From positions 124,001 to 188,000 of IMG/VR virus record IMGVR_UViG_3300030041_000009: DNA of 64,000 bases; one strand, given 5' to 3'. The notes below the pieces were generated by a model. The model was not told where the DNA came from. It ran no database searches and worked only from the letters and a program-made list of their open reading frames with translations. Every line of letters starts with the position of its first letter. The first letter of the stretch is position 1. Below, piece after piece: positions 6,997 to 21,502 of this stretch. Both the position numbers and the translations under genes were made by a program.

Positions 6997-9294
6997 ATGA
7001 AATTAGAAGAAATTGTATCAAATAGTAGTGGAATATCATTAATAACTCATTCAAAAGCAGTTAAAAAAATAGGAATGATGTTATCAAAAAAGTTATCATT
7101 AAATGAAGACCTTGAAAAACAAATTTCAATAGCTTGTTTATTGCATGATTTAGGTAAATGTAATTTAGATTTTCAAAATTATATAAAATCAAAAAGTAAA
7201 ACAATTTCTTTTATTAATTCTCCAATATTTCATCATGAAATAAGTTGGGCATTTGTGTCATGTATTTTAAATAATGATGAATATAGATATTCTTTAGATT
7301 CAATATATTGGCATCATTCTAAACCAAAAATAAATTATATAAGTAATGATAATATATCATTAATTTTAAGTGATATGTGTGATGATGATAAAAAAAATAT
7401 TTTATCAATGTATAATTTTTTAATGAATGAAAATATATTATTTGAAGATATAAATTTTGAAAAATCTATCAATACTCCATTATATTATTTAAATGAACCA
7501 AATAGTTTAACAAATTCTAAAAATTCATTAGTAAGATCTTGTGTTATAACTGCTGATAGACTTGTATCAGCATCAGATCAAGAAAAAATATTGTATGATG
7601 ATGATTATTGTGAAGAATTAATAAACAATTTATCATATAAAGATACTAAAGTATATAGCAAACCTATTAATTATGATTCTATTCGTTTTGATTCTCAAGT
7701 TGATTACGCAAATCAATCATTAAATAATCGAACTACAATAATGAAAGCCCCAGCCGGTTTTGGTAAAACATTATTGGGGTTATTATGGTCATTAAAATCT
7801 AATAAAAAATTAATATGGGTATGCCCTAGAAATATTATTGCTGAAAATGTATATAATTCTGTTTTACAAGAATTAAAAAATATATCAGTTGAATTATCAG
7901 TTGAGTTATATTTAACAGGTAATAGACAGAAAACAAATAATGAAAACACTAAAGAATTTACATCTGATATTATAATAACTAATATAGATAATTATTTATC
8001 TCCTAATGTGAATAATTCTATTAGAAATAGATTATTTGTTATTAATTATTGTGATGTGATTTTTGATGAATATCATGAATTAATTAAAGATGATGCACTA
8101 TTTGCATGTTTTATTAATATCATGAAATCTAGACATATGTTAACAAATAGTCACACATTATTATTAAGTGCTACACAAACTATAATGGAATATTTATGGG
8201 ATGGAACAAATATAGATAAAAAAACTAAAATTTTACCAAATAAAAATTCTCATTATACATCTGCACATAATGGTAAATATTTGATTAATTATATTGATGA
8301 TATTGATACAATAACTAATGAAAAAGATTCAGTTGTTATTATGAATTCTATTTCAAATTCTCAAAGATTATATTGTTATAAAAAAGGCGATATTTTAATA
8401 CATAGTAGATATATAGATTCTGATAAAGAAAAAATAATGAATAAAATTATTCATTTATATGGCAAAGAAAATAAAAATATTTTGAATAAAGATAGTATTA
8501 TATCAGCACCTATTTTACAAGCATCTATGGATATATCATTTTTAAATTTAACAGATAGTGTGATGTCTCCAGAAACTACTTTACAAAGAATAGGTCGATG
8601 TGATAGGTGGGGACATTTTTATTATAAAAAAAATAAAACTCCAAAAATAAATTTATTTTTTAATGAAAATAAAAGTGAATTTAGAAACTCAGAAAACACT
8701 AGTATATCAAATCAATATGATTTAGAATTAAATAAATTATGGATTTCATTTATTAAAAAACATATTATTAACGGAAATTTATATTCAATAAATGAATTAT
8801 ATGAATATTATAATATGTTTAATAATGAAAATAATGAAAATTTAAAAAAGTTTATCACATCTAAACTAAAAACAAGTTTATTAAATTTATGTAAAATTGA
8901 ACCGTATAAGATGATGGAGAAATCTAAAAACAATACAATTAAAAATAATAATACTAAATTAAGAAGTGGAGGAGATATATATTGTATATATAAATATGCA
9001 AAAAAAAGACAAATGACGGACTCATTTAGTGTAGATTTTAATCGAGATATTAAAAAATCTGAACCAATAACAGGTTTAGATAGTAAAATTAAGAGAATAA
9101 TAAAGAATATTATAAAAATTAAGGATGATAGATTTTTTTATAATAAATATTCGTTATTTAAAAATAATCAATATACTTTACCTATACTTAAAGATTATGC
9201 CAGGAAAAAAGAAACCCCATATATTGCATTTGATAAAGTTTATTGTGAAAAATTAGGATTAGTAAAAAATGATATTTACGATAATTTAATATAA
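6997..9294 (+). CDS. cas3: Cas3 HD nuclease-helicase (no N-terminal Cas2 fusion)
   Basis: HD motifs HS, LLHDLGK, HHE, WHH, AD; SF2 motifs APAGFGKT, DEYH, SAT, HSR, QRIGRCDR; follows array. Confidence 0.95.
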   Translation: MKLEEIVSNSSGISLITHSKAVKKIGMMLSKKLSLNEDLEKQISIACLLHDLGKCNLDFQNYIKSKSKTISFINSPIFHHEISWAFVSCILNNDEYRYSLDSIYWHHSKPKINYISNDNISLILSDMCDDDKKNILSMYNFLMNENILFEDINFEKSINTPLYYLNEPNSLTNSKNSLVRSCVITADRLVSASDQEKILYDDDYCEELINNLSYKDTKVYSKPINYDSIRFDSQVDYANQSLNNRTTIMKAPAGFGKTLLGLLWSLKSNKKLIWVCPRNIIAENVYNSVLQELKNISVELSVELYLTGNRQKTNNENTKEFTSDIIITNIDNYLSPNVNNSIRNRLFVINYCDVIFDEYHELIKDDALFACFINIMKSRHMLTNSHTLLLSATQTIMEYLWDGTNIDKKTKILPNKNSHYTSAHNGKYLINYIDDIDTITNEKDSVVIMNSISNSQRLYCYKKGDILIHSRYIDSDKEKIMNKIIHLYGKENKNILNKDSIISAPILQASMDISFLNLTDSVMSPETTLQRIGRCDRWGHFYYKKNKTPKINLFFNENKSEFRNSENTSISNQYDLELNKLWISFIKKHIINGNLYSINELYEYYNMFNNENNENLKKFITSKLKTSLLNLCKIEPYKMMEKSKNNTIKNNNTKLRSGGDIYCIYKYAKKRQMTDSFSVDFNRDIKKSEPITGLDSKIKRIIKNIIKIKDDRFFYNKYSLFKNNQYTLPILKDYARKKETPYIAFDKVYCEKLGLVKNDIYDNLI

Positions 9295-9386: not shown

Positions 9387-11339
9387 ATGGTAAATAATAA
9401 CATTATTAGTGTTAAAGCTAAAAGAAATTTAATTAATGGTCAACTTACTAAAAATAATAAACCATACGTAAGAAAATTTGATTTTAGTCGTTATAGCAAT
9501 GATCAATTAGTTGATGCTTTATATAGTAAGAAATGGAATACTAATCGAAAAAAAGCACTTATTGCAATTAATAAATTAATAGATATTAGAATTAAAAATG
9601 ATAAATGTACTAAATATGATATTGAAAATCTAAAAGATATTGTATATAATAAAAAACACCAATTAATAAAATCTGCTAATAGTAATAGTAAAACAACTAC
9701 CACCACCACAACTATTCCAGCAAATACTAATTTAGCTCATAGTATAAAATTTCGTATTAATAAATTGATTTCTGAAATATATCGTCTAACTGGCATCAAA
9801 TTAGAAAAATTAAATAGAACTGATAATATTAATGATAAATCACACGTATTTGATGATCAGATTTTTGCATCATTAAGTTGCATATATAATATGTTATCAT
9901 CAAAACTTAATTCAAAACATAGTAGGTATAATATGTTAACTGCAGAAACTCAAGCAGGTAAAACTGGTGTTGTACGTAATATAATATATTTATTAGAAAC
10001 TTATCAAGAATTAAGAGAATATCTAAATTTGAAATTTAGAAGTAGTGTATTAATAACTCCAATGTGTGATAATTCAAATAAAGAACAATTAAAAACTGAC
10101 ATATCTCATGGAGAGTGTCGGCAAGATGATCAAAAAATATTAAAGAGGAATGGTATTATGCATAATCCAGATTTAATTCGTTGGTCAAGAAAAAATAAAG
10201 TAGGTGATTTAAATAATTGTATTATATTTATTGATGAAGCTCATTTAGCATCAAATGTTGATAGTGCTATGAATAGTTATCTTCAAAAAAATGGTATAAA
10301 TTTAAATGGTTCAACTGATTTATCAAAAAAAAATATTTTCTTATTTTCTATATCAGCAACTCCGTATGAAGAACATGTTGGTAATATTTTATATAAAAGA
10401 AAGAACACTATTGAATTATCTCACGGACCTAATTACAAAGGCTTAGAATATTTTTTAAAAAATAATTTTTTAAGAGAATCATTTGATTTATCAACAACAG
10501 AAGGTGAAAAACATTTTATAAATGAAGCAGAAAGCTTTAATAATAAAATAGGATATTATATTGTTAGAATAAATAAAAATACAAATACAAATAATCTAAT
10601 ACCTGATGGATTTAAAACTTTGACATATTATGAGAAAGATAAAGAAGTTATTAATGATGTATTAAAAAATGCACCAGATGCTCCTACCATAATATTTATT
10701 AAGGAGAAAATGAAGCAATCATATCAATTAGAGAAAGAAAATATTGTAATGTTATTTGATAGAACTACAGTTAATGATTCTACATATAGAACAAGTTTTA
10801 TTGTTCAAAGTTTTGCAGGTAGATCATGTGGATATCATAATTATAATTTTATAATTTATACAGAAATAAAACACATCAAACTTCATCTTTCATATTTAAA
10901 AAATAAATATAATGTTCCTCCATGTAAACATGTAATTAAGAAAAATAAATTTAATTTTAAAAATGGTATAAAAGAACAAGCTTCATCATATAGTGATCAA
11001 AATGATTCATCACATACAAATGATTTTTCATTAAAAATTGTACATAATACACCGAATGAAGGTTATATAGAATTAAATAATAATATCATAACAATATATT
11101 TAGATAAAGATAAAAATTTAGTATTATCTAAAAAATCAAAAGTAGAAACAAATTTTCTTGCATCATATATTGAAGATTATGTTGTTATTTCTGATATTAA
11201 AACTCCTTGTGCAAATTTAATTGATGTAAAAAATGCATTAACATATTACTGTCAACTTATATCATCAAAAATAACAATAAATGATATTAAAACTAAAAAT
11301 GGTAAAAAATTTATTGATTTATTAGAATTTGAATTTTAA
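9387..11339 (+). CDS. SF2 helicase-like ATPase
   Basis: TQAGKT (Walker A), IDEAH (Walker B), SATP, QSFAGRSCGY (motif VI). Confidence 0.75.
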   Translation: MVNNNIISVKAKRNLINGQLTKNNKPYVRKFDFSRYSNDQLVDALYSKKWNTNRKKALIAINKLIDIRIKNDKCTKYDIENLKDIVYNKKHQLIKSANSNSKTTTTTTTIPANTNLAHSIKFRINKLISEIYRLTGIKLEKLNRTDNINDKSHVFDDQIFASLSCIYNMLSSKLNSKHSRYNMLTAETQAGKTGVVRNIIYLLETYQELREYLNLKFRSSVLITPMCDNSNKEQLKTDISHGECRQDDQKILKRNGIMHNPDLIRWSRKNKVGDLNNCIIFIDEAHLASNVDSAMNSYLQKNGINLNGSTDLSKKNIFLFSISATPYEEHVGNILYKRKNTIELSHGPNYKGLEYFLKNNFLRESFDLSTTEGEKHFINEAESFNNKIGYYIVRINKNTNTNNLIPDGFKTLTYYEKDKEVINDVLKNAPDAPTIIFIKEKMKQSYQLEKENIVMLFDRTTVNDSTYRTSFIVQSFAGRSCGYHNYNFIIYTEIKHIKLHLSYLKNKYNVPPCKHVIKKNKFNFKNGIKEQASSYSDQNDSSHTNDFSLKIVHNTPNEGYIELNNNIITIYLDKDKNLVLSKKSKVETNFLASYIEDYVVISDIKTPCANLIDVKNALTYYCQLISSKITINDIKTKNGKKFIDLLEFEF

Positions 11340-15540: not shown

Positions 15541-16290
15541 ATGAGAAACTTGATAAGTTTTCAAAAAATGTTTGAATATGCCACAGGTGAAAAAATAAAA
15601 ACCAGATGGACAGAAAATGATGTAATTATAGCATTATATTATGAAAAATTTGGATTTAGTAAACTTGGTATTAAAGATGATAAAATTGAAAAATTTGTAA
15701 ATGAATATATTGGTTCAAATGAATCATCATTAAAAATGGAAGCATTGAACATAAGATATGCATTAGGATTAAAATATAATGAAGAACCAGAAGGATTATC
15801 TAGATTTTCAAAATTACATGTGAAAGTTATAAATGAATACGATAGTTTTTCTGAACCAGAATTAAGAGAAGTTGTAGAGAATATTATAGATAATACAACT
15901 GAATCTCAAATATTTAAGAATGTATCACAAGCAGAAAATCAAAGAAAAGAAGTTCTTAAAAGAAGAGAATCTAAAAGAAAGGCAAAAGAAATGAATCCAG
16001 GTAGAAGAATAGGAAGACCAAGTTCTAGTGATATAGAAATAAAAAATATACCAGTAGATGATTCAACTGATTCATATGGTAGACCAATATCAAAACTTAA
16101 TGATATAAAATCAGATGAACAATCATTTGTTCAAGTTGGTGATATTCTTAATCATAAAAAATTTGGTAGAGGAGATGTGATATCTGTTAATGGAAATTTA
16201 ATTGAAATAGATTTCTTTGAAAATGAATTAGGTACAAAAAAACTTATATTTAAACCTGAATTGTTCAACTGGACTCCTGATTTATTTTAA
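15541..16290 (+). CDS. Paralog of 12286..13044 with N-terminal ..FE tag and C-terminal Tudor-like domain
   Basis: QVGDILNHKKFGRGDVISV..LGTKKL. Confidence 0.75.
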   Translation: MRNLISFQKMFEYATGEKIKTRWTENDVIIALYYEKFGFSKLGIKDDKIEKFVNEYIGSNESSLKMEALNIRYALGLKYNEEPEGLSRFSKLHVKVINEYDSFSEPELREVVENIIDNTTESQIFKNVSQAENQRKEVLKRRESKRKAKEMNPGRRIGRPSSSDIEIKNIPVDDSTDSYGRPISKLNDIKSDEQSFVQVGDILNHKKFGRGDVISVNGNLIEIDFFENELGTKKLIFKPELFNWTPDLF

Positions 16291-18970: not shown

Positions 18971-19303
18971 TTATAAATTAAATTTGTTTGATGCTAATAT
19001 AATTTCTGATTTAAAATCATTAGCTAAGCATTGATTTAAAATTATATTATGTTTTATGTCTTTAACGTCAATCCACCAATCCCCTTTATATTTTTCTGTT
19101 ACATATTGATGATCAATTATAAATGGATTTCCTTCATCATCAAAATTTTCCTCATATATTTTTAATACTAAATATTTTTTACCTTCTTTTGGTTCAGTAC
19201 TATTATAATTTTTCCTTTTTTCACCGTGAATGCATATTACTTCATCACCTACTGAAAAATATATATCGTCATTTTCTTCAAATATTTTAAAATTTGTTAT
19301 CAT
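18971..19303 (-). CDS. Dual-tag family protein (MITNFKIFE ... NKFNL)
   Basis: Terminal motifs. Confidence 0.75.
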   Translation of the reverse strand: MITNFKIFEENDDIYFSVGDEVICIHGEKRKNYNSTEPKEGKKYLVLKIYEENFDDEGNPFIIDHQYVTEKYKGDWWIDVKDIKHNIILNQCLANDFKSEIILASNKFNL

Positions 19304-19791
19304 ATGTTAAATTTGTTTGCTGATTTATTTAATTTAAATTCTTCAAATTCTTCTGGAGTTAATACACCAGATGTTTGGAATATTACAAATCCGTTATTTT
19401 TTAATTCTTCTGTGAAATTTTTAATAGCATAATCAGCATAATAAAAAATTTCTGAGTAATCTTCATTACCTTCGTCAGTTAATTCACCAGAATCATCAAT
19501 ATAATATCCTATTGTAATACAAGGAGCTTCCATCATAATACCAATATCAGAAATATTATAAATATATAATAATTCAGAGTTTGAAGATATATTTTCAAAA
19601 TAATCAAAAAAATCTGCTTCCTTTATATCAATATCTTCTTCAACTTTTTCTTTTCCTTCTTCAGTTAATGATATTTTAAGATTCCCATTTTCTAATCTTT
19701 CTAATGTTAAATAATTACCACTGCGTAACTCACGTGTATCATGAGATATCATAGTCTCATTTAGAGTAAATATATTAAATTTTGTTATCAT
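19300..19791 (-). CDS. Dual-tag family protein (probable start MITKFNIF ... NKFNI)
   Basis: Start reassigned to the ATG next to the upstream stop. Confidence 0.7.
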   Translation of the reverse strand: MITKFNIFTLNETMISHDTRELRSGNYLTLERLENGNLKISLTEEGKEKVEEDIDIKEADFFDYFENISSNSELLYIYNISDIGIMMEAPCITIGYYIDDSGELTDEGNEDYSEIFYYADYAIKNFTEELKNNGFVIFQTSGVLTPEEFEEFKLNKSANKFNI

Positions 19792-19792
19792 A

Positions 19793-20233
19793 TTATATGT
19801 TAAATTTATTTGTTGTTTTATATATTTCAATTCCTCCAACTTCATTAATACTATTTAATAATTCTGCTATATTTTCTGTGTCACCAACATATCCAGGATT
19901 AGAATTTTCATCTAAATTGTTAATTGGAAATCCTTCAATATATAATTCATCTTCTAATCCAGAACTTTCCATACTCCAAATTTTATATGTTTTCCCAAAT
20001 ATACTAACTATAGCATAAGCACCTTGATATAAATCGTGTCCTCTAATATCTTTTATTTTTAATATAGTATCATTATCTAAATTTGAAATTATATAATCTA
20101 ATCTTTCTTCTAAATACCTAATTAAACTTGCTTCTTCACTATCATCATCAGGATTATCTTTAACATAGTTCCAATTTACATCTCTACTCCATTCTCCTGT
20201 TTCGTATATTTTAAATGTTTTTAAATGTTTCAT
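19793..20233 (-). CDS. Dual-tag family protein (MKHLKTFKIYE ... NKFNI)
   Basis: Terminal motifs. Confidence 0.75.
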   Translation of the reverse strand: MKHLKTFKIYETGEWSRDVNWNYVKDNPDDDSEEASLIRYLEERLDYIISNLDNDTILKIKDIRGHDLYQGAYAIVSIFGKTYKIWSMESSGLEDELYIEGFPINNLDENSNPGYVGDTENIAELLNSINEVGGIEIYKTTNKFNI

Positions 20234-20492: not shown

Positions 20493-20623
20493 TATCTTTG
20501 GATTTCTTTTTACATCTACAATTTGCTGTGAAGCAAAAGATGTTTCTTTTTGTTAAATTTTGTTAGTTGTATTACTTAGTTTTTAGAAAGACTTCCTTAC
20601 TGATATATTCAGTAAGGAAGTTT
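20493..20623 (+). ncRNA. Putative small RNA unit 2
   Basis: TATCTTTG box, ACATCT..TGCTGTGAAGCA..AGATGT hairpin, CTTCCTTACTGA/TCAGTAAGGAAG stem. Confidence 0.55.
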
Positions 20624-20645
20624 AATAAATTAAAAAATTAAAAAT

Positions 20646-20849
20646 ATGAAAGAATTAATAGATGATACTCAGGTTCCAGATAGAGGATATTATTATTTAT
20701 TAGATTGGAATGAAGCCGATAGATGGGAAACTATGCTAAGATTATTTGATAAAAAAAGATTATGTGATTTGGAATTACATGAATATATTCAATTATTCGA
20801 AATTGCAACAAAAAAAGATTTAGAAAATTTAAAAATAGAAAAAACTTAA
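20646..20849 (+). CDS. Hypothetical protein
   Basis: ORF track. Confidence 0.6.
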   Translation: MKELIDDTQVPDRGYYYLLDWNEADRWETMLRLFDKKRLCDLELHEYIQLFEIATKKDLENLKIEKT

Positions 20850-20895
20850 TAAAATTATATTACTATATACATTACAAACAAAAATTAAAATTCTT

Positions 20896-20949
20896 ATGAA
20901 TAATAATATTTCAAACATGATTCAGCAACAACAACAAACTTACGTTTGA
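20896..20949 (+). CDS. Gln-rich leader peptide MNNNISNMIQQQQQTYV
   Basis: CAG CAA CAA CAA CAA run; stop codon overlaps antiterminator arm; precedes two tRNA-Gln genes. Confidence 0.75.
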   Translation: MNNNISNMIQQQQQTYV

Positions 20950-21033
20950 TTGGGTTAGAGTCATGTCTGTTTTTTACCCAATCCTGAAATGGTTTGGGTT
21001 TTTTTGTGCCCAACATTTTATGTTGGGTTTTTT
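20916..21033 (+). promoter_or_regulatory. Transcription attenuator with two tandem terminators
   Basis: Antiterminator GATTGGGT(20948-55)/ACCCAATC(20976-83); terminator 1 at 20976-21005; terminator 2 at 21008-21033. Confidence 0.75.
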
Positions 21034-21043
21034 GTTAATATAC

Positions 21044-21129
21044 TGCCTTGTGATGGAATTGGCTAAACATTTCAGTCTTTGAAACTGATGCTCATTGTGA
21101 GCTTGTGGGTTCGAACCCCACCAAGGCGA
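21044..21129 (+). tRNA. tRNA with TTG (Gln) anticodon on a class II long-variable-arm body
   Basis: Acceptor TGCCTTG/CAAGGCG, anticodon arm TCAGT-CTTTGAA-ACTGA, variable stem GCTCA/TGAGC, T-arm GTGGG-TTCGAAC-CCCAC; CCA not encoded. Confidence 0.85.
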
Positions 21130-21135
21130 CAATAT

Positions 21136-21206
21136 TCTTTCTTGATGTAATGATAGCATATCATTTTCTGACAATGAATGACTAAGTTCAAATCTTAGAG
21201 AAAGAA
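21136..21206 (+). tRNA. tRNA-Gln(CTG), AT-rich
   Basis: Acceptor TCTTTCT/AGAAAGA, anticodon arm TCATT-TTCTGAC-AATGA, T-arm CTAAG-TTCAAAT-CTTAG; D-loop has GA instead of GG. Confidence 0.75.
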
Positions 21207-21207
21207 C

Positions 21208-21244
21208 AAAAAAATCCTGAAATTTAAATTTCAGGATTTTTTTT
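21208..21244. terminator. Bidirectional terminator after tRNAs
   Basis: Perfect palindrome AAAATCCTGAAATTTAAATTTCAGGATTTT. Confidence 0.7.
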
Positions 21245-21502
21245 ATAATCATTATAGAATTTAAGATATTCTTCATCTGTTTGTTTATTAAATTTCATTT
21301 GGTACATTAGAATTTGTCCTAATTCAGCTCCAGATAATTCACCTGAATCAAATCCAAGTTCTTTTATAATTTGGAAGATAGTTTTATTTTTCATATCTTC
21401 TTTACTTGTAGTTCTAAATTTAAACTCTAATTCAATTGCTAATTTTTTAATTTTTTCAGGAATGTTATATTCGAAAAATTCATAAGTTTTAATAAATTTC
21501 AT
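21224..21502 (-). CDS. Hypothetical protein with N-terminal MKFIKTYE tag
   Basis: ORF track. Confidence 0.65.
   Translation of the reverse strand: MKFIKTYEFFEYNIPEKIKKLAIELEFKFRTTSKEDMKNKTIFQIIKELGFDSGELSGAELGQILMYQMKFNKQTDEEYLKFYNDYKKNPEI

What the first reader, a model, noticed from the sequence alone, without database searches (positions are those of the whole stretch)
20896..21206. Glutamine-sensing leader-peptide attenuator controlling two phage tRNA-Gln genes
Seen: a 17-codon ORF with CAG-CAA-CAA-CAA-CAA is followed by mutually exclusive helices. These are a protector ACATGATTC(20916-24)/GAGTCATGT(20958-66), an antiterminator GATTGGGT(20948-55, overlapping the stop codon)/ACCCAATC(20976-83), and a terminator ACCCAATCC/GGTTTGGGT with a U-run. 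Directly downstream are tRNAs with TTG and CTG anticodons, exactly those that read the leader's CAA and CAG codons. Knowledge: ribosome-stalling attenuators are classic for amino-acid biosynthesis and pheST operons; I do not know of one described for phage tRNA genes. Inference: a feedback sensor that produces replacement tRNA-Gln only when charged Gln-tRNA is scarce, for example after host anti-phage tRNA cleavage.
Basis: partly seen in the sequence, partly recalled or inferred. Interest (0 to 1): 0.9.

Follow-up and report, generated by a model that had tools for sequence, protein, structure and literature searches.

The report
Codon-sensing attenuator controlling phage tRNA genes
A large phage puts its two glutamine tRNA genes behind a tiny glutamine-rich reading frame and switchable terminator hairpins, so the tRNAs are probably made only when ribosomes stall on glutamine codons; related phages guard many other tRNA clusters the same way, and I found no published description.

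Summary
A 17-codon ORF (20896-20949) carries the only run of four or more Gln codons in the 64-kb window.

In the related huge phage LR756504 and in many IMG/VR and metagenome contigs, tRNA groups are preceded by the same module: a small ORF, an antiterminator/terminator pair, and then the tRNA within 0-14 nt. In each case the ORF is rich in the amino acids of the tRNAs that follow. Examples are LSLCLSLSLSL before Leu/Ser/Cys, FWHFHF before His/Phe, KKKK before Lys, and QQQQQ(Q) before Gln in four sequence-distinct families. The true leader-to-tRNA pairing is the single best of 362,880 permutations.

Folding with a ribosome placed codon by codon shows the switch. Stalling on the cognate codons leaves the terminator's 5' arm sequestered, and a ribosome at the stop codon frees it.

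Nothing was tested experimentally. The promoter is not identified, and the second terminator is relieved only in a kinetic sense. Eight literature searches and two key papers gave no prior description. I rate it a new variant of leader-peptide attenuation, of high interest.

The parts
20864..20877 (+). Conserved upstream motif TATATACATTACAA, a possible promoter or 5'-UTR element, 18 nt before the leader ATG
   Evidence: Unique in the window. Identical in relatives L288 and L303. The similar motif ATATATACGTTATAATA precedes leaders in LR756504. Its function is not established.
20896..20949 (+). Leader ORF, 17 codons plus TGA: MNNNISNMIQQQQQTYV
   Evidence: The peptide is conserved in L288, L297, L321 and L355 with synonymous changes only. 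Four of five variable sites among the window, L288 and L303 are at codon position 3. No SD is expected, since only 1 of 56 long ORFs has one.
20923..20937 (+). Regulatory codons CAG CAA CAA CAA CAA (Gln x5)
   Evidence: The only run of four or more Gln codons in the window. Invariant in relatives; L291 has CAA x4 followed by CAG.
20915..20966 (+). Protector (anti-antiterminator) hairpin. Outer helix 20915-23 / 20958-66; inner pairing of the CAA run with 20944-55
   Evidence: Part of the minimum-free-energy fold; -16.8 kcal/mol. Pairs kept in 97% of cells across 4 relatives.
20948..20983 (+). Antiterminator A:B. GATTGGGT 20948-55, overlapping the stop codon, pairs with ACCCAATC 20976-83
   Evidence: -11.4 kcal/mol as a hairpin. 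The duplex beats 1000 of 1000 shuffles. Helix probability is 0.7-0.9 with the A-site on Q10-Q12 and 0 with no ribosome or at the stop. Invariant in 4 relatives. The register is shifted but the pairing is kept in L344.
20976..21005 (+). Terminator T1: stem 20976-20999 plus U-run 21000-21005
   Evidence: -10.5 kcal/mol. Probability is 0.83 without a ribosome, 0-0.2 with the A-site on the Gln codons, and 0.8 at the stop.
20994..21013 (+). Second antiterminator C:D. The T1 3' arm TTGGGT pairs with the T2 5' arm GCCCAA
   Evidence: Found by the terminator scan as an alternative hairpin; -7.1 kcal/mol. The T2 5' arm is pre-paired at 0.8-0.9 while the ribosome is on I5-T15, and at 0.3 at the stop or with none.
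21008..21033 (+). Terminator T2: stem 21008-21028 plus U-run 21029-33
   Evidence: -11.1 kcal/mol. One compensatory A-U to U-A pair among relatives. The tandem T1+T2 is kept in L288, L303 and L291 but absent in L344.
21034..21043 (+). 10-nt junction GTTAATATAC between the T2 U-run and the tRNA; no room for a promoter
   Evidence: GGGTTTTTTGTT occurs once in the window. In LR756504 it occurs 5 times, always at leader modules. 15 of 80 viral loci with the junction motif have a tRNA starting 0-3 nt after it, against 0 of 80 bacterial loci.
21044..21130 (+). tRNA with anticodon UUG, 87 nt, class II shape (long variable arm, A73)
   Evidence: The 5' half matches a phage tRNA-Leu(UAG) with one change at anticodon position 35. 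Conserved in L288 and L303.
21136..21207 (+). tRNA-Gln with anticodon CUG, 72 nt
21208..21243 (.). Bidirectional terminator hairpin closing the unit, shared with the convergent minus-strand gene 21224-21502
   Evidence: 16-bp stem with T-runs on both sides.

Best explanation
This is a ribosome-mediated (leader-peptide) transcription attenuator that gates the phage's two Gln-decoding tRNA genes.

**Proposed mechanism**
- Transcription starts upstream of 20896; the promoter is not identified.
- A ribosome translates the 17-codon leader while RNA polymerase moves on.
- If CAA/CAG are decoded quickly, the ribosome reaches the stop codon (20947-49) and covers segment A (20948-55). Segment B then pairs with C to form terminator T1, and D pairs with E to form terminator T2. 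Transcription stops before the tRNAs.
- If no ribosome loads, the protector hairpin (20915-66) holds A, with the same result.
- If Gln-tRNA able to read CAA/CAG is scarce, the ribosome stalls on codons 10-14. This opens the protector but leaves A free.
- A then pairs with B, which frees C. C captures D as soon as D emerges, so neither terminator forms. Polymerase runs into tRNA(UUG) and tRNA(CUG), which are cut out of the read-through transcript.
- Newly made tRNA relieves the stall. The unit is therefore a negative-feedback supply of decoding capacity.

**Shown here**
- The sequence elements and their conservation.
- The thermodynamic and pre-emptive pairing switch in silico.
- Recurrence of codon-matched leaders in front of other phage tRNA groups.

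**Inferred, not shown**
- That the ORF is translated.
- That T1 and T2 terminate.
- Transcription-translation coupling in the host, which is unknown but probably Bacteroidota-like.
- The physiological trigger.
For: **Elements present and beyond chance**
-.
- Only 10 nt separate the T2 U-run from the tRNA, so tRNA synthesis has to pass the terminators.

**Ribosome-position folding**
- T1 probability is 0.83 with no ribosome, 0-0.2 with the A-site on Q10-Q14, and 0.8 at the stop.
- The 5' arms of both T1 and T2 are pre-paired upstream at 0.8-0.99 only while the ribosome sits on I5-T15. For T1, 1 of 500 shuffles reaches the observed value.

**Same module in LR756504** (nearest GenBank relatives by gp32 and a phrog_36119 protein)
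- Eight leaders are each rich in the amino acids of the downstream tRNAs.
- The observed pairing of nine leaders (eight from LR756504 plus the window's) to tRNA sets is the single best of 362,880 permutations. Without the window it is 1 of 40,320.
- Across ten modules, cognate codons sit at antiterminator-permissive ribosome positions in 70 of 91 cases, against 70 of 161 for other codons (p = 1.7e-7).

**Gln leaders elsewhere**
- Four sequence-distinct Gln-containing leader families precede tRNA-Gln: the window type, MKTIFVQQQQQQ..., MRTTTQYQQQQQ..., and the mixed K/Q/Y leader of LR756504.
- No Q-leader precedes another tRNA.

**Window-type relatives** (83% mean column identity)
- They keep the ORF, the stop codon inside A, and segments A-E invariant, while the loops vary.

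**Large-array family**
- A conserved leader contains 15 amino-acid types and lacks A, D, E and G. The tRNAs up to the next leader cover 14 of those 15 types and none of A, D, E, G.
- The next leader (MKNLHILLIGGDLAEATF...) contains G, D, A and E, and precedes the Gly, Glu, Asp and Ala tRNAs.

**Other checks**
- None of 80 sampled bacterial loci carrying the junction motif has the arrangement.
- No known Rfam family explains the leader.
Against: - There are no experimental data of any kind.
- At equilibrium T2 stays formed (0.5-0.75) in every ribosome state. Its relief rests on a kinetic argument (C:D -7.1 against T2 -11.1 kcal/mol). One relative (L344) has a single terminator.
- The promoter is unidentified. 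The nearest Bacteroidota-type -7 motif on this strand is about 400 nt upstream, before orf67.
- Covariation within the window type is almost nil because the paired segments are invariant: one compensatory pair among four sequences.
- Gln codons are only 2.15% of codons in the window's long ORFs, so a special need for tRNA-Gln is not obvious.
- The first tRNA has a Leu-type class II body, so its charging identity is uncertain.
- If a phage RNA polymerase transcribes the unit, intrinsic terminators may behave differently.
- For the large-array family the antiterminator is seen only as pre-pairing, not at equilibrium.
Confidence: 0.8

Rival explanations
1. Ordinary gene-end terminators. T1 and T2 simply end the upstream orf67 (20646-20849) transcript. 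The tRNAs come from constitutive leaky read-through or an unrecognised promoter. The 17-codon ORF and its Gln run are chance features.
For: T2 is predicted to form in all ribosome states at equilibrium. No promoter was identified for the leader. AT-rich genomes contain many short ORFs.
Against: It is the only Gln-codon run in 128 kb of both strands, and it sits about 110 nt before two Gln-decoding tRNAs. The A:B complementarity beats 1000 of 1000 shuffles. The module recurs with matched amino acids upstream of other tRNA groups (1 of 362,880) and with other Gln leaders. Only 10 nt lie between T2 and the tRNA. The ORF is conserved with synonymous changes.
Confidence: 0.04
2. A translation-dependent switch that does not sense Gln decoding specifically. 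The leader reports global ribosome availability or elongation, or acts through Rho/polarity or transcript stability. The codon content only tunes its speed.
For: In several relatives (M3, M6, M7 of LR756504) the antiterminator is the default fold without any ribosome, so any loss of translation would switch those units on. Leaders of large arrays sample about 15 amino acids, which behaves like a general elongation sensor.
Against: Leader composition follows the specific downstream tRNA set in each module, including single-amino-acid leaders for Gln and Lys. In the window the no-ribosome default is termination. Cognate codons are concentrated at the ribosome positions that preserve the antiterminator. 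Strong hairpin-plus-U-run terminators are present, so Rho is not needed.
Confidence: 0.1
3. An RNA-level sensor without translation. The CAA repeat is bound by a protein (it fits A-R-N repeats of the kind Hfq binds; this is from my own knowledge). Alternatively it pairs directly with the UUG anticodon in a T-box-like way to switch the hairpins.
For: In the free RNA the CAA run pairs with segment A, so anything that binds the run would free A.
Against: There is no T-box, glutamine riboswitch or other Rfam family. Leaders for other amino acids have no A-R-N repeats but keep an ATG-initiated frame, a stop codon placed in or next to the antiterminator strand, and third-position variation. Multi-amino-acid leaders cannot be explained by one anticodon pairing.
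Confidence: 0.03

Closest known systems
Leader-peptide transcription attenuators of amino-acid biosynthetic operons (trp, his, phe, leu, thr, ilv in Proteobacteria; recalled from my own knowledge, modelled in PMC1183508)
   Same: A short leader ORF carries a run of regulatory codons. Protector, antiterminator and terminator helices alternate. The stop codon is placed so that a terminating ribosome covers the antiterminator strand. Stalling on the regulatory codons gives read-through. Multi-amino-acid leaders also exist there (thr, ilv).
   Different: The controlled genes are tRNA genes (plus short aaRS genes in relatives), not biosynthetic enzymes. The output tRNA itself relieves the stall, so the loop closes at decoding rather than at amino-acid supply. 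The unit is carried by phages, and some versions have two tandem terminators linked by a chain of five segments. No sequence similarity: Thr_leader gives only sub-threshold hits, on the unrelated hairpin at 21190-21257.
pheST (pheM leader) attenuator of E. coli phenylalanyl-tRNA synthetase (recalled from my own knowledge; pheL leaders are discussed in PMC3082878)
   Same: Leader-peptide attenuation applied to a component of the translation apparatus, with codons cognate to that component's amino acid.
   Different: That system controls a protein (a synthetase) in a bacterial chromosome. Here the products are tRNAs in a phage. LR756504 does place class II aaRS genes inside the leader-controlled units.
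T-box riboswitches (RF00230)
   Same: They sense tRNA status to control read-through of a terminator upstream of translation-related genes, with codon-anticodon specificity.
   Different: A T-box binds uncharged tRNA directly and needs no translation. No T-box match was found here.
Known ideas on why phages carry tRNAs (codon-usage compensation, replacement of degraded host tRNAs, evasion of anticodon nucleases; recalled from my own knowledge, not re-read here)
   Same: The phage supplements the host decoding capacity.
   Different: As far as I know those accounts do not include a cis-acting sensor. This module would tell which codons the phage monitors and make supply conditional on need.

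Membership tests
Ribosome-mediated (leader-peptide) transcription attenuator | Short translatable ORF in the leader with a cluster of regulatory codons cognate to the controlled function | tested here: met
   ORF 20896-20949 with five Gln codons, followed by UUG and CUG tRNAs. The leader-tRNA match across nine modules is 1 of 362,880. Translation itself is not shown.
Ribosome-mediated (leader-peptide) transcription attenuator | Intrinsic terminator between the leader ORF and the controlled genes, with no promoter in between | tested here: met
   T1 and T2 are hairpins followed by U-runs. Only 10 nt lie between the T2 U-run and the tRNA. The sigma-70-type scan finds no plus-strand site between 20950 and 21043. 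Termination activity is not measured.
Ribosome-mediated (leader-peptide) transcription attenuator | Antiterminator helix mutually exclusive with the terminator | tested here: met
   A:B shares 20976-83 with T1, and C:D shares 21008-13 with T2. Both are conserved in relatives.
Ribosome-mediated (leader-peptide) transcription attenuator | Geometry: a ribosome stalled on the regulatory codons preserves the antiterminator, and a ribosome at the stop codon destroys it | tested here: met
   In silico only. T1 probability is 0-0.2 on Q10-Q14 and 0.8 at the stop. Pre-pairing of both terminator 5' arms shows the same pattern. Pooled over ten modules, p = 1.7e-7.
Ribosome-mediated (leader-peptide) transcription attenuator | Anti-antiterminator (1:2) hairpin giving termination when the leader is not translated | tested here: met
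   The protector 20915-66 is in the minimum-free-energy fold at -16.8 kcal/mol. It is not universal in the wider family: M3, M6 and M7 default to the antiterminator.
Ribosome-mediated (leader-peptide) transcription attenuator | Read-through depends on leader translation and on supply of the cognate charged tRNA | not testable with these tools
   This needs reporter, Term-seq or in vitro coupled assays.
T-box riboswitch | Specifier loop and conserved T-box sequence that binds the tRNA acceptor end (Rfam RF00230) | tested here: not met
   No match at the gathering threshold or at E <= 10 in 20600-21300.
Glutamine riboswitch (glnA RNA and related Rfam families) | Match to the Rfam covariance model | tested here: not met
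   No match.
Canonical bacterial tRNA-Gln (for the first tRNA) | Class I shape with a short variable loop; identity elements as in E. coli (G73, weak 1-72 pair, G10; recalled from my own knowledge) | tested here: not met
   It is 87 nt with a 5-bp variable-arm stem, A73 and A10. Its 5' half matches a tRNA-Leu(UAG) apart from position 35. The anticodon UUG and a weak U1.G72 pair are present. Charging is not testable here.

The most novel reading that the evidence does not exclude
Large phages of Bacteroidota-type hosts carry a widespread, undescribed family of 'codon-sampling' leader-peptide attenuators. Each leader lists the codons served by the tRNA genes behind it, and sometimes by cut-down aminoacyl-tRNA synthetase genes as well. 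The phage therefore measures the host's decoding capacity codon by codon and makes only the tRNAs that are running short. The window's Gln unit, with a five-segment chain controlling two terminators, is one member. The class II-shaped tRNAs with Gln, Thr, Asn and Lys anticodons found in the same units may be part of a phage-private, defence-resistant supply.
Probability: 0.6. Interest if true: 0.93.

Novelty: new variant of a known kind. Interest (0 to 1): 0.88.

Why it matters
**Why it matters**
- Why phages carry tRNA genes, and when they use them, is an open question.
- A cis-acting sensor written in codons would show that tRNA supply is conditional and under feedback control.
- It would reveal directly which codons each phage monitors.
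- It would extend leader-peptide attenuation from amino-acid metabolism to the decoding machinery itself.

**What it offers in practice**
- Simple testable constructs: leader-terminator-reporter fusions.
- A way to read tRNA stress during infection.
- Compact natural parts for codon-specific sensing in synthetic biology.

**How widespread it appears**
- The module is found in contigs of 19 kb to more than 600 kb, from many samples.
- It therefore looks like a general strategy rather than a curiosity.

Tried and rejected
**Searches that led nowhere**
- **Synteny through neighbouring proteins.** The 236-aa neighbour gave only the seven identical IMG/VR contigs. In the large protein database it gave four hits on contigs of 1.2-1.5 kb that do not reach the tRNAs.
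- **Exact tRNA 3'-end pattern.** It found the same seven contigs, identical across the locus and so uninformative.
- **D-loop plus anticodon-loop pattern for class II UUG tRNAs.** The extra hits were chance matches without tRNAs.
- **Synteny around the phrog_36119 homologue in LR756501 and LR745206.** No tRNAs lie there. The LR756504 stretch fetched for the same purpose (L016) is where the first related module was seen by accident.
- **blastn of the locus against GenBank phages.** No match.
- **Bacterial genomes with the junction motif.** 80 loci, mostly Bacteroidota; none has a tRNA directly after the motif. There is therefore no sign that hosts use the same module.
- **Metagenome scan with ATGATTCARCAACAACAACAR.** 73 of 80 hits are unrelated CAA repeats. 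Seven are true modules, one of them a new variant, L344.

**Ideas considered and set aside**
- **Known RNA families.** Only the tRNAs pass threshold.
- **Own promoter between T2 and the tRNA.** Rejected: only 10 nt are available and the scan finds no site.
- **Equilibrium folding as the sole model.** Rejected for T2, M4 and the large-array family, where only pre-emptive (co-transcriptional order) pairing shows the switch.
- **Hfq or T-box-like reading of the CAA run.** Rejected on comparative grounds; see the rival explanations.
- **TAG or TGA recoding in the window.** ORF lengths give no clear sign of it, although TAG is almost never used as a stop.

**Literature**
- Eight full-text searches, plus reading of Devoto 2019 and Al-Shayeb 2020, found no description of attenuators or leaders for phage tRNA genes.
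Full report
**1. What is in the sequence**

The window has about 21% G+C. It encodes a gp32-like ssDNA-binding protein, a Cas3-like HD helicase and tape-measure-like fragments.

Its locus is identical in seven IMG/VR contigs of 181-256 kb. The nearest GenBank relatives, by gp32 and a phrog_36119 protein, are the 0.63-0.74-Mb 'uncultured phage' genomes LR756501-4 and LR745206, followed by the Prevotella Lak phages. Only 1 of 56 long ORFs has a Shine-Dalgarno-like motif. This fits a Bacteroidota-type host, although the host itself is not known.

On the plus strand, between two blocks of minus-strand genes, lies a small unit:
- orf67 (20646-20849);
- a 17-codon ORF (20896-20949, MNNNISNMIQQQQQTYV);
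- two hairpin-plus-U-run terminators, T1 (20976-21005) and T2 (21008-21033);
- a 10-nt junction;
- tRNA(UUG) at 21044-21130;
- tRNA(CUG) at 21136-21207;
- a bidirectional terminator at 21208-21243.

**2. Check of the observation**

They are beyond chance on several counts.
- The Gln run is the only run of four or more Gln codons in either strand of the window.
- TTGGGT occurs four times in 64 kb, three of them here.
- The A:B duplex (-12.0 kcal/mol) is not reached by any of 1000 dinucleotide shuffles.
- The region folds with z = -3.8.

- A, GATTGGGT, 20948-55;
- B, ACCCAATC, 20976-83;
- C, TTGGGT, 20994-99;
- D, GCCCAA, 21008-13;
- E, TTGGGT, 21023-28.

**3. Folding with a ribosome**

I masked the mRNA from 15 nt before to 10 nt after the first base of the A-site codon, or folded only the RNA 3' of the ribosome.

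| Ribosome state | T1 probability | A:B probability |
|---|---|---|
| No ribosome | 0.83 | 0 |
| A-site on the Gln codons | 0-0.2 | 0.7-0.9 (first three Gln codons) |
| At the stop codon | 0.8 | 0 |

In the free RNA the CAA run itself pairs with the A region inside the protector hairpin (-16.8 kcal/mol).

T2 stays formed at equilibrium in all states (0.5-0.75). However, in a transcript cut just before T2's 3' arm, its 5' arm is already paired with C at 0.8-0.9 while the ribosome is on I5-T15. That figure is only 0.3 at the stop or without a ribosome. T2 is therefore linked to the ribosome only through the order of folding. This is also how the classical trp attenuator is understood (from my own knowledge), but here it is an inference.

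**4. Comparative evidence**

This is the decisive part. While checking synteny in LR756504, I saw that a six-tRNA cluster (Glu, Ala, Ile, Val, Gly, Glu) is preceded by three things:
- a terminator ending in GGGTTTTTTGTTTTATAT directly at the first tRNA;
- a 34-codon ORF whose core reads IAIVEIAVIGGAEEGV;
- a 9-bp antiterminator inside that ORF.

I then fetched the record in 13 pieces, mapped its tRNAs and read all upstream regions. Eight modules of the same build appeared.

| Leader core | Downstream tRNAs |
|---|---|
| MTTIIRNMNNNINRTRTT | Thr, then an aaRS gene, Asn, Thr, Arg |
| IIRMRIIR | Arg(UCU), Ile, Met |
| IAIVEIAVIGGAEEGV | Glu, Ala, Ile, Val, Gly, Glu |
| IFWHFHF | His, Phe (with a Trp-like stretch before them) |
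| KQDKQYQPQYD | Asp |
| KKQQYKQYQPQYK | Tyr, Tyr, Gln |
| IIKKKK | three tRNA-Lys, then an aaRS gene |
| LSLCLSLSLSL | Leu, Leu, Ser, Cys, Ser ... |

Statistical support:
- I scored the fraction of leader residues that match the tRNAs of the leader's own segment. The observed assignment of nine leaders (eight from LR756504 plus the window's) to nine tRNA sets is the best of all 362,880 permutations. Without the window it is 1 of 40,320.
- GGGTTTTTTGTT occurs five times in the 636 kb of LR756504, always at such modules, and once in the window, at T2.

**5. Wider distribution**

Fifteen of them have a tRNA starting 0-3 nt after the motif, each with a leader.
- Eleven carry a conserved 34-35-codon leader (for example MKTNLRHMVLCNKPNNQWSFSYITPKPSR...) in front of arrays of 7-16 tRNAs.
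- That leader has 15 amino-acid types and lacks A, D, E and G. The tRNAs up to the next leader cover 14 of those 15 types and none of A, D, E, G.
- The next leader (MKNLHILLIGGDLAEATF...) contains G, D, A and E, and precedes the Gly, Glu, Asp and Ala tRNAs.

*Scan for four CAA codons followed 62-92 nt later by GGGTTTTTT.* This found 35 loci.
- Every small ORF with a Q-run is followed by two to four tRNA-Gln genes, and none by another tRNA.
- These fall into three sequence families: the window type (including MKNLSNNIMIQQQQQITV in contigs of 308 and 501 kb), MKTIFVQQQQQQTLSK..., and MRTTTQYQQQQQINPTD.

*Metagenome scan.* It added MKTLNNMIQQQQQTDFSV, followed by four tRNA-Gln genes. In this variant the stop codon is again inside the antiterminator strand, but there is only one terminator.

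*Bacterial genomes.* Eighty bacterial loci with the junction motif, mostly Bacteroidota, have no tRNA at the junction. The module therefore looks phage-specific at this sampling.

**6. Conservation within the window type**

In an alignment of four distinct sequences (83% mean column identity), segments A-E, the Gln run and the stop codon are invariant, while the hairpin loops and the spacer vary. All proposed pairs are kept in 99-100% of cells. Covariation, however, is limited to one A-U to U-A exchange in T2 and G.U/G-C changes in the protector. This is compatible with segments that must each pair with two partners, but it is not proof. Among the window, L288 and L303, four of five variable leader sites are at codon position 3, and the peptide is unchanged in L288. 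This hints at translation.

**7. A general test of the mechanism**

For ten modules I computed, for each A-site codon, the probability that the terminator's 5' arm is already paired upstream before the 3' arm exists.
- In all of them the probability is high while the ribosome is on or before the cognate run, and falls after it.
- Cognate codons lie at permissive positions in 70 of 91 cases, against 70 of 161 for other codons (odds ratio 4.3, p = 1.7e-7).
- In several LR756504 modules the equilibrium terminator probability dips exactly over the cognate run.

**8. What remains open**

- *Promoter.* It is not identified. A motif unique in the window (TATATACATTACAA, 20864-77) is shared with relatives, and resembles ATATATACGTTATAATA before the LR756504 leaders. 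In the large-array family a Bacteroidota-type TTG...TAnnTTTG promoter lies further upstream. In the window the nearest such motif is at 20493.
- *Why Gln.* Gln codons are only 2.15% of codons in the window's long ORFs.
- *The first tRNA.* It has a class II shape, and its 5' half matches a phage tRNA-Leu(UAG) except for anticodon position 35. Which enzyme charges it is unknown.

**9. Comparison with what is known, and novelty**

The logic is that of classical leader-peptide attenuation, and the in-silico defining features are met (see the membership table). What differs:
- the controlled product is tRNA, plus class II aaRS genes in LR756504;
- the carrier is a phage;
- the leader is used as a list of the codons served;
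- here, a five-segment chain spans two terminators.

No Rfam family matches. Eight full-text searches, and the two founding papers on these phages, contain nothing on attenuators or leaders for phage tRNA genes. The library is incomplete, so a prior description cannot be excluded.

**10. Verdict**

- Observation: confirmed.
- Interpretation: supported.
- Confidence in the mechanism: 0.8.
- Novelty: a new variant of a known kind.
- Interest: high.

Noticed in passing
window 21044-21130: The UUG tRNA is 87 nt long with a 5-bp variable-arm stem, a 3-bp D stem and A73 (class II shape). Its 5' half aligns to Aeromonas phage APT65 tRNA-Leu(UAG), with the anticodon loop differing only at position 35. 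It is conserved (86 nt) in relatives L288, L297 and L303, and L344 has a 90-nt version. It may not be charged like a normal tRNA-Gln.
   Followed up: partly
L027 36028-36208; L033 7979-8067 (LR756504): The related huge phage has 88-89-nt tRNAs with Thr(UGU), Asn(GUU) and Lys(UUU) anticodons, next to normal-length isoacceptors. L283 has 83-91-nt Arg and Pro tRNAs. Long-arm tRNAs for amino acids that normally use short-arm tRNAs seem to be a trait of this phage group.
   Followed up: no
L027 36215-37375 (-); L033 6748-7884 (-) (LR756504): Short class II aminoacyl-tRNA synthetase genes lie inside leader-controlled tRNA units. One is 386 aa (tRNA-synt_2b plus HGTP_anticodon) and comes right after tRNA-Thr. 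The other is 378 aa (D/K/N-type core only) and comes after three tRNA-Lys. An HNH endonuclease ORF (L033 8280-9140) sits in the same cluster.
   Followed up: partly
L031 about 15810-15891 (+); L033 about 9460-9540 (-) (LR756504): tRNA-like stretches with T-arm and acceptor pairing, and anticodon-like loops CCA (Trp) and UGG (Pro), lie between the terminator and the first called tRNA. Neither ARAGORN nor Rfam calls them. Their leaders contain W and P respectively.
   Followed up: partly
window, whole: Among ORFs of at least 100 aa, the stops are TAA 65, TGA 24 and TAG 1. TAG is almost unused as a stop, although TGA has the same base composition. The Lak relatives read TAG as Gln (PMC6784885). 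ORF lengths give no clear sign of recoding in this window.
   Followed up: partly
window 6997-9294 (+): A 765-aa ORF with an HD domain, a DEAD/ResIII helicase and a Cas3 C-terminal domain: a Cas3-like protein in a phage.
   Followed up: no
window 18971-20233 (-): Three adjacent ORFs (110, 181 and 146 aa) all end in ...NKFNL or ...KFNI, which suggests a small paralogous family. No PHROG match.
   Followed up: no
window 21208-21243: A 16-bp perfect hairpin with A- and T-runs on either side. It serves as a shared terminator for the tRNA unit and for the convergent gene 21224-21502, and it overlaps that gene's 3' end.
   Followed up: no
L030 35507-35863 (-) (LR756504): The huge phage encodes a tmRNA next to a tRNA-Met and an odd tRNA with a four-base anticodon call (tcta). 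These lie outside any leader module.
   Followed up: no
window 20646-20849 (+): orf67 lies directly upstream of the leader and has no family match. Whether it is co-transcribed with the leader and the tRNAs is unknown.
   Followed up: no
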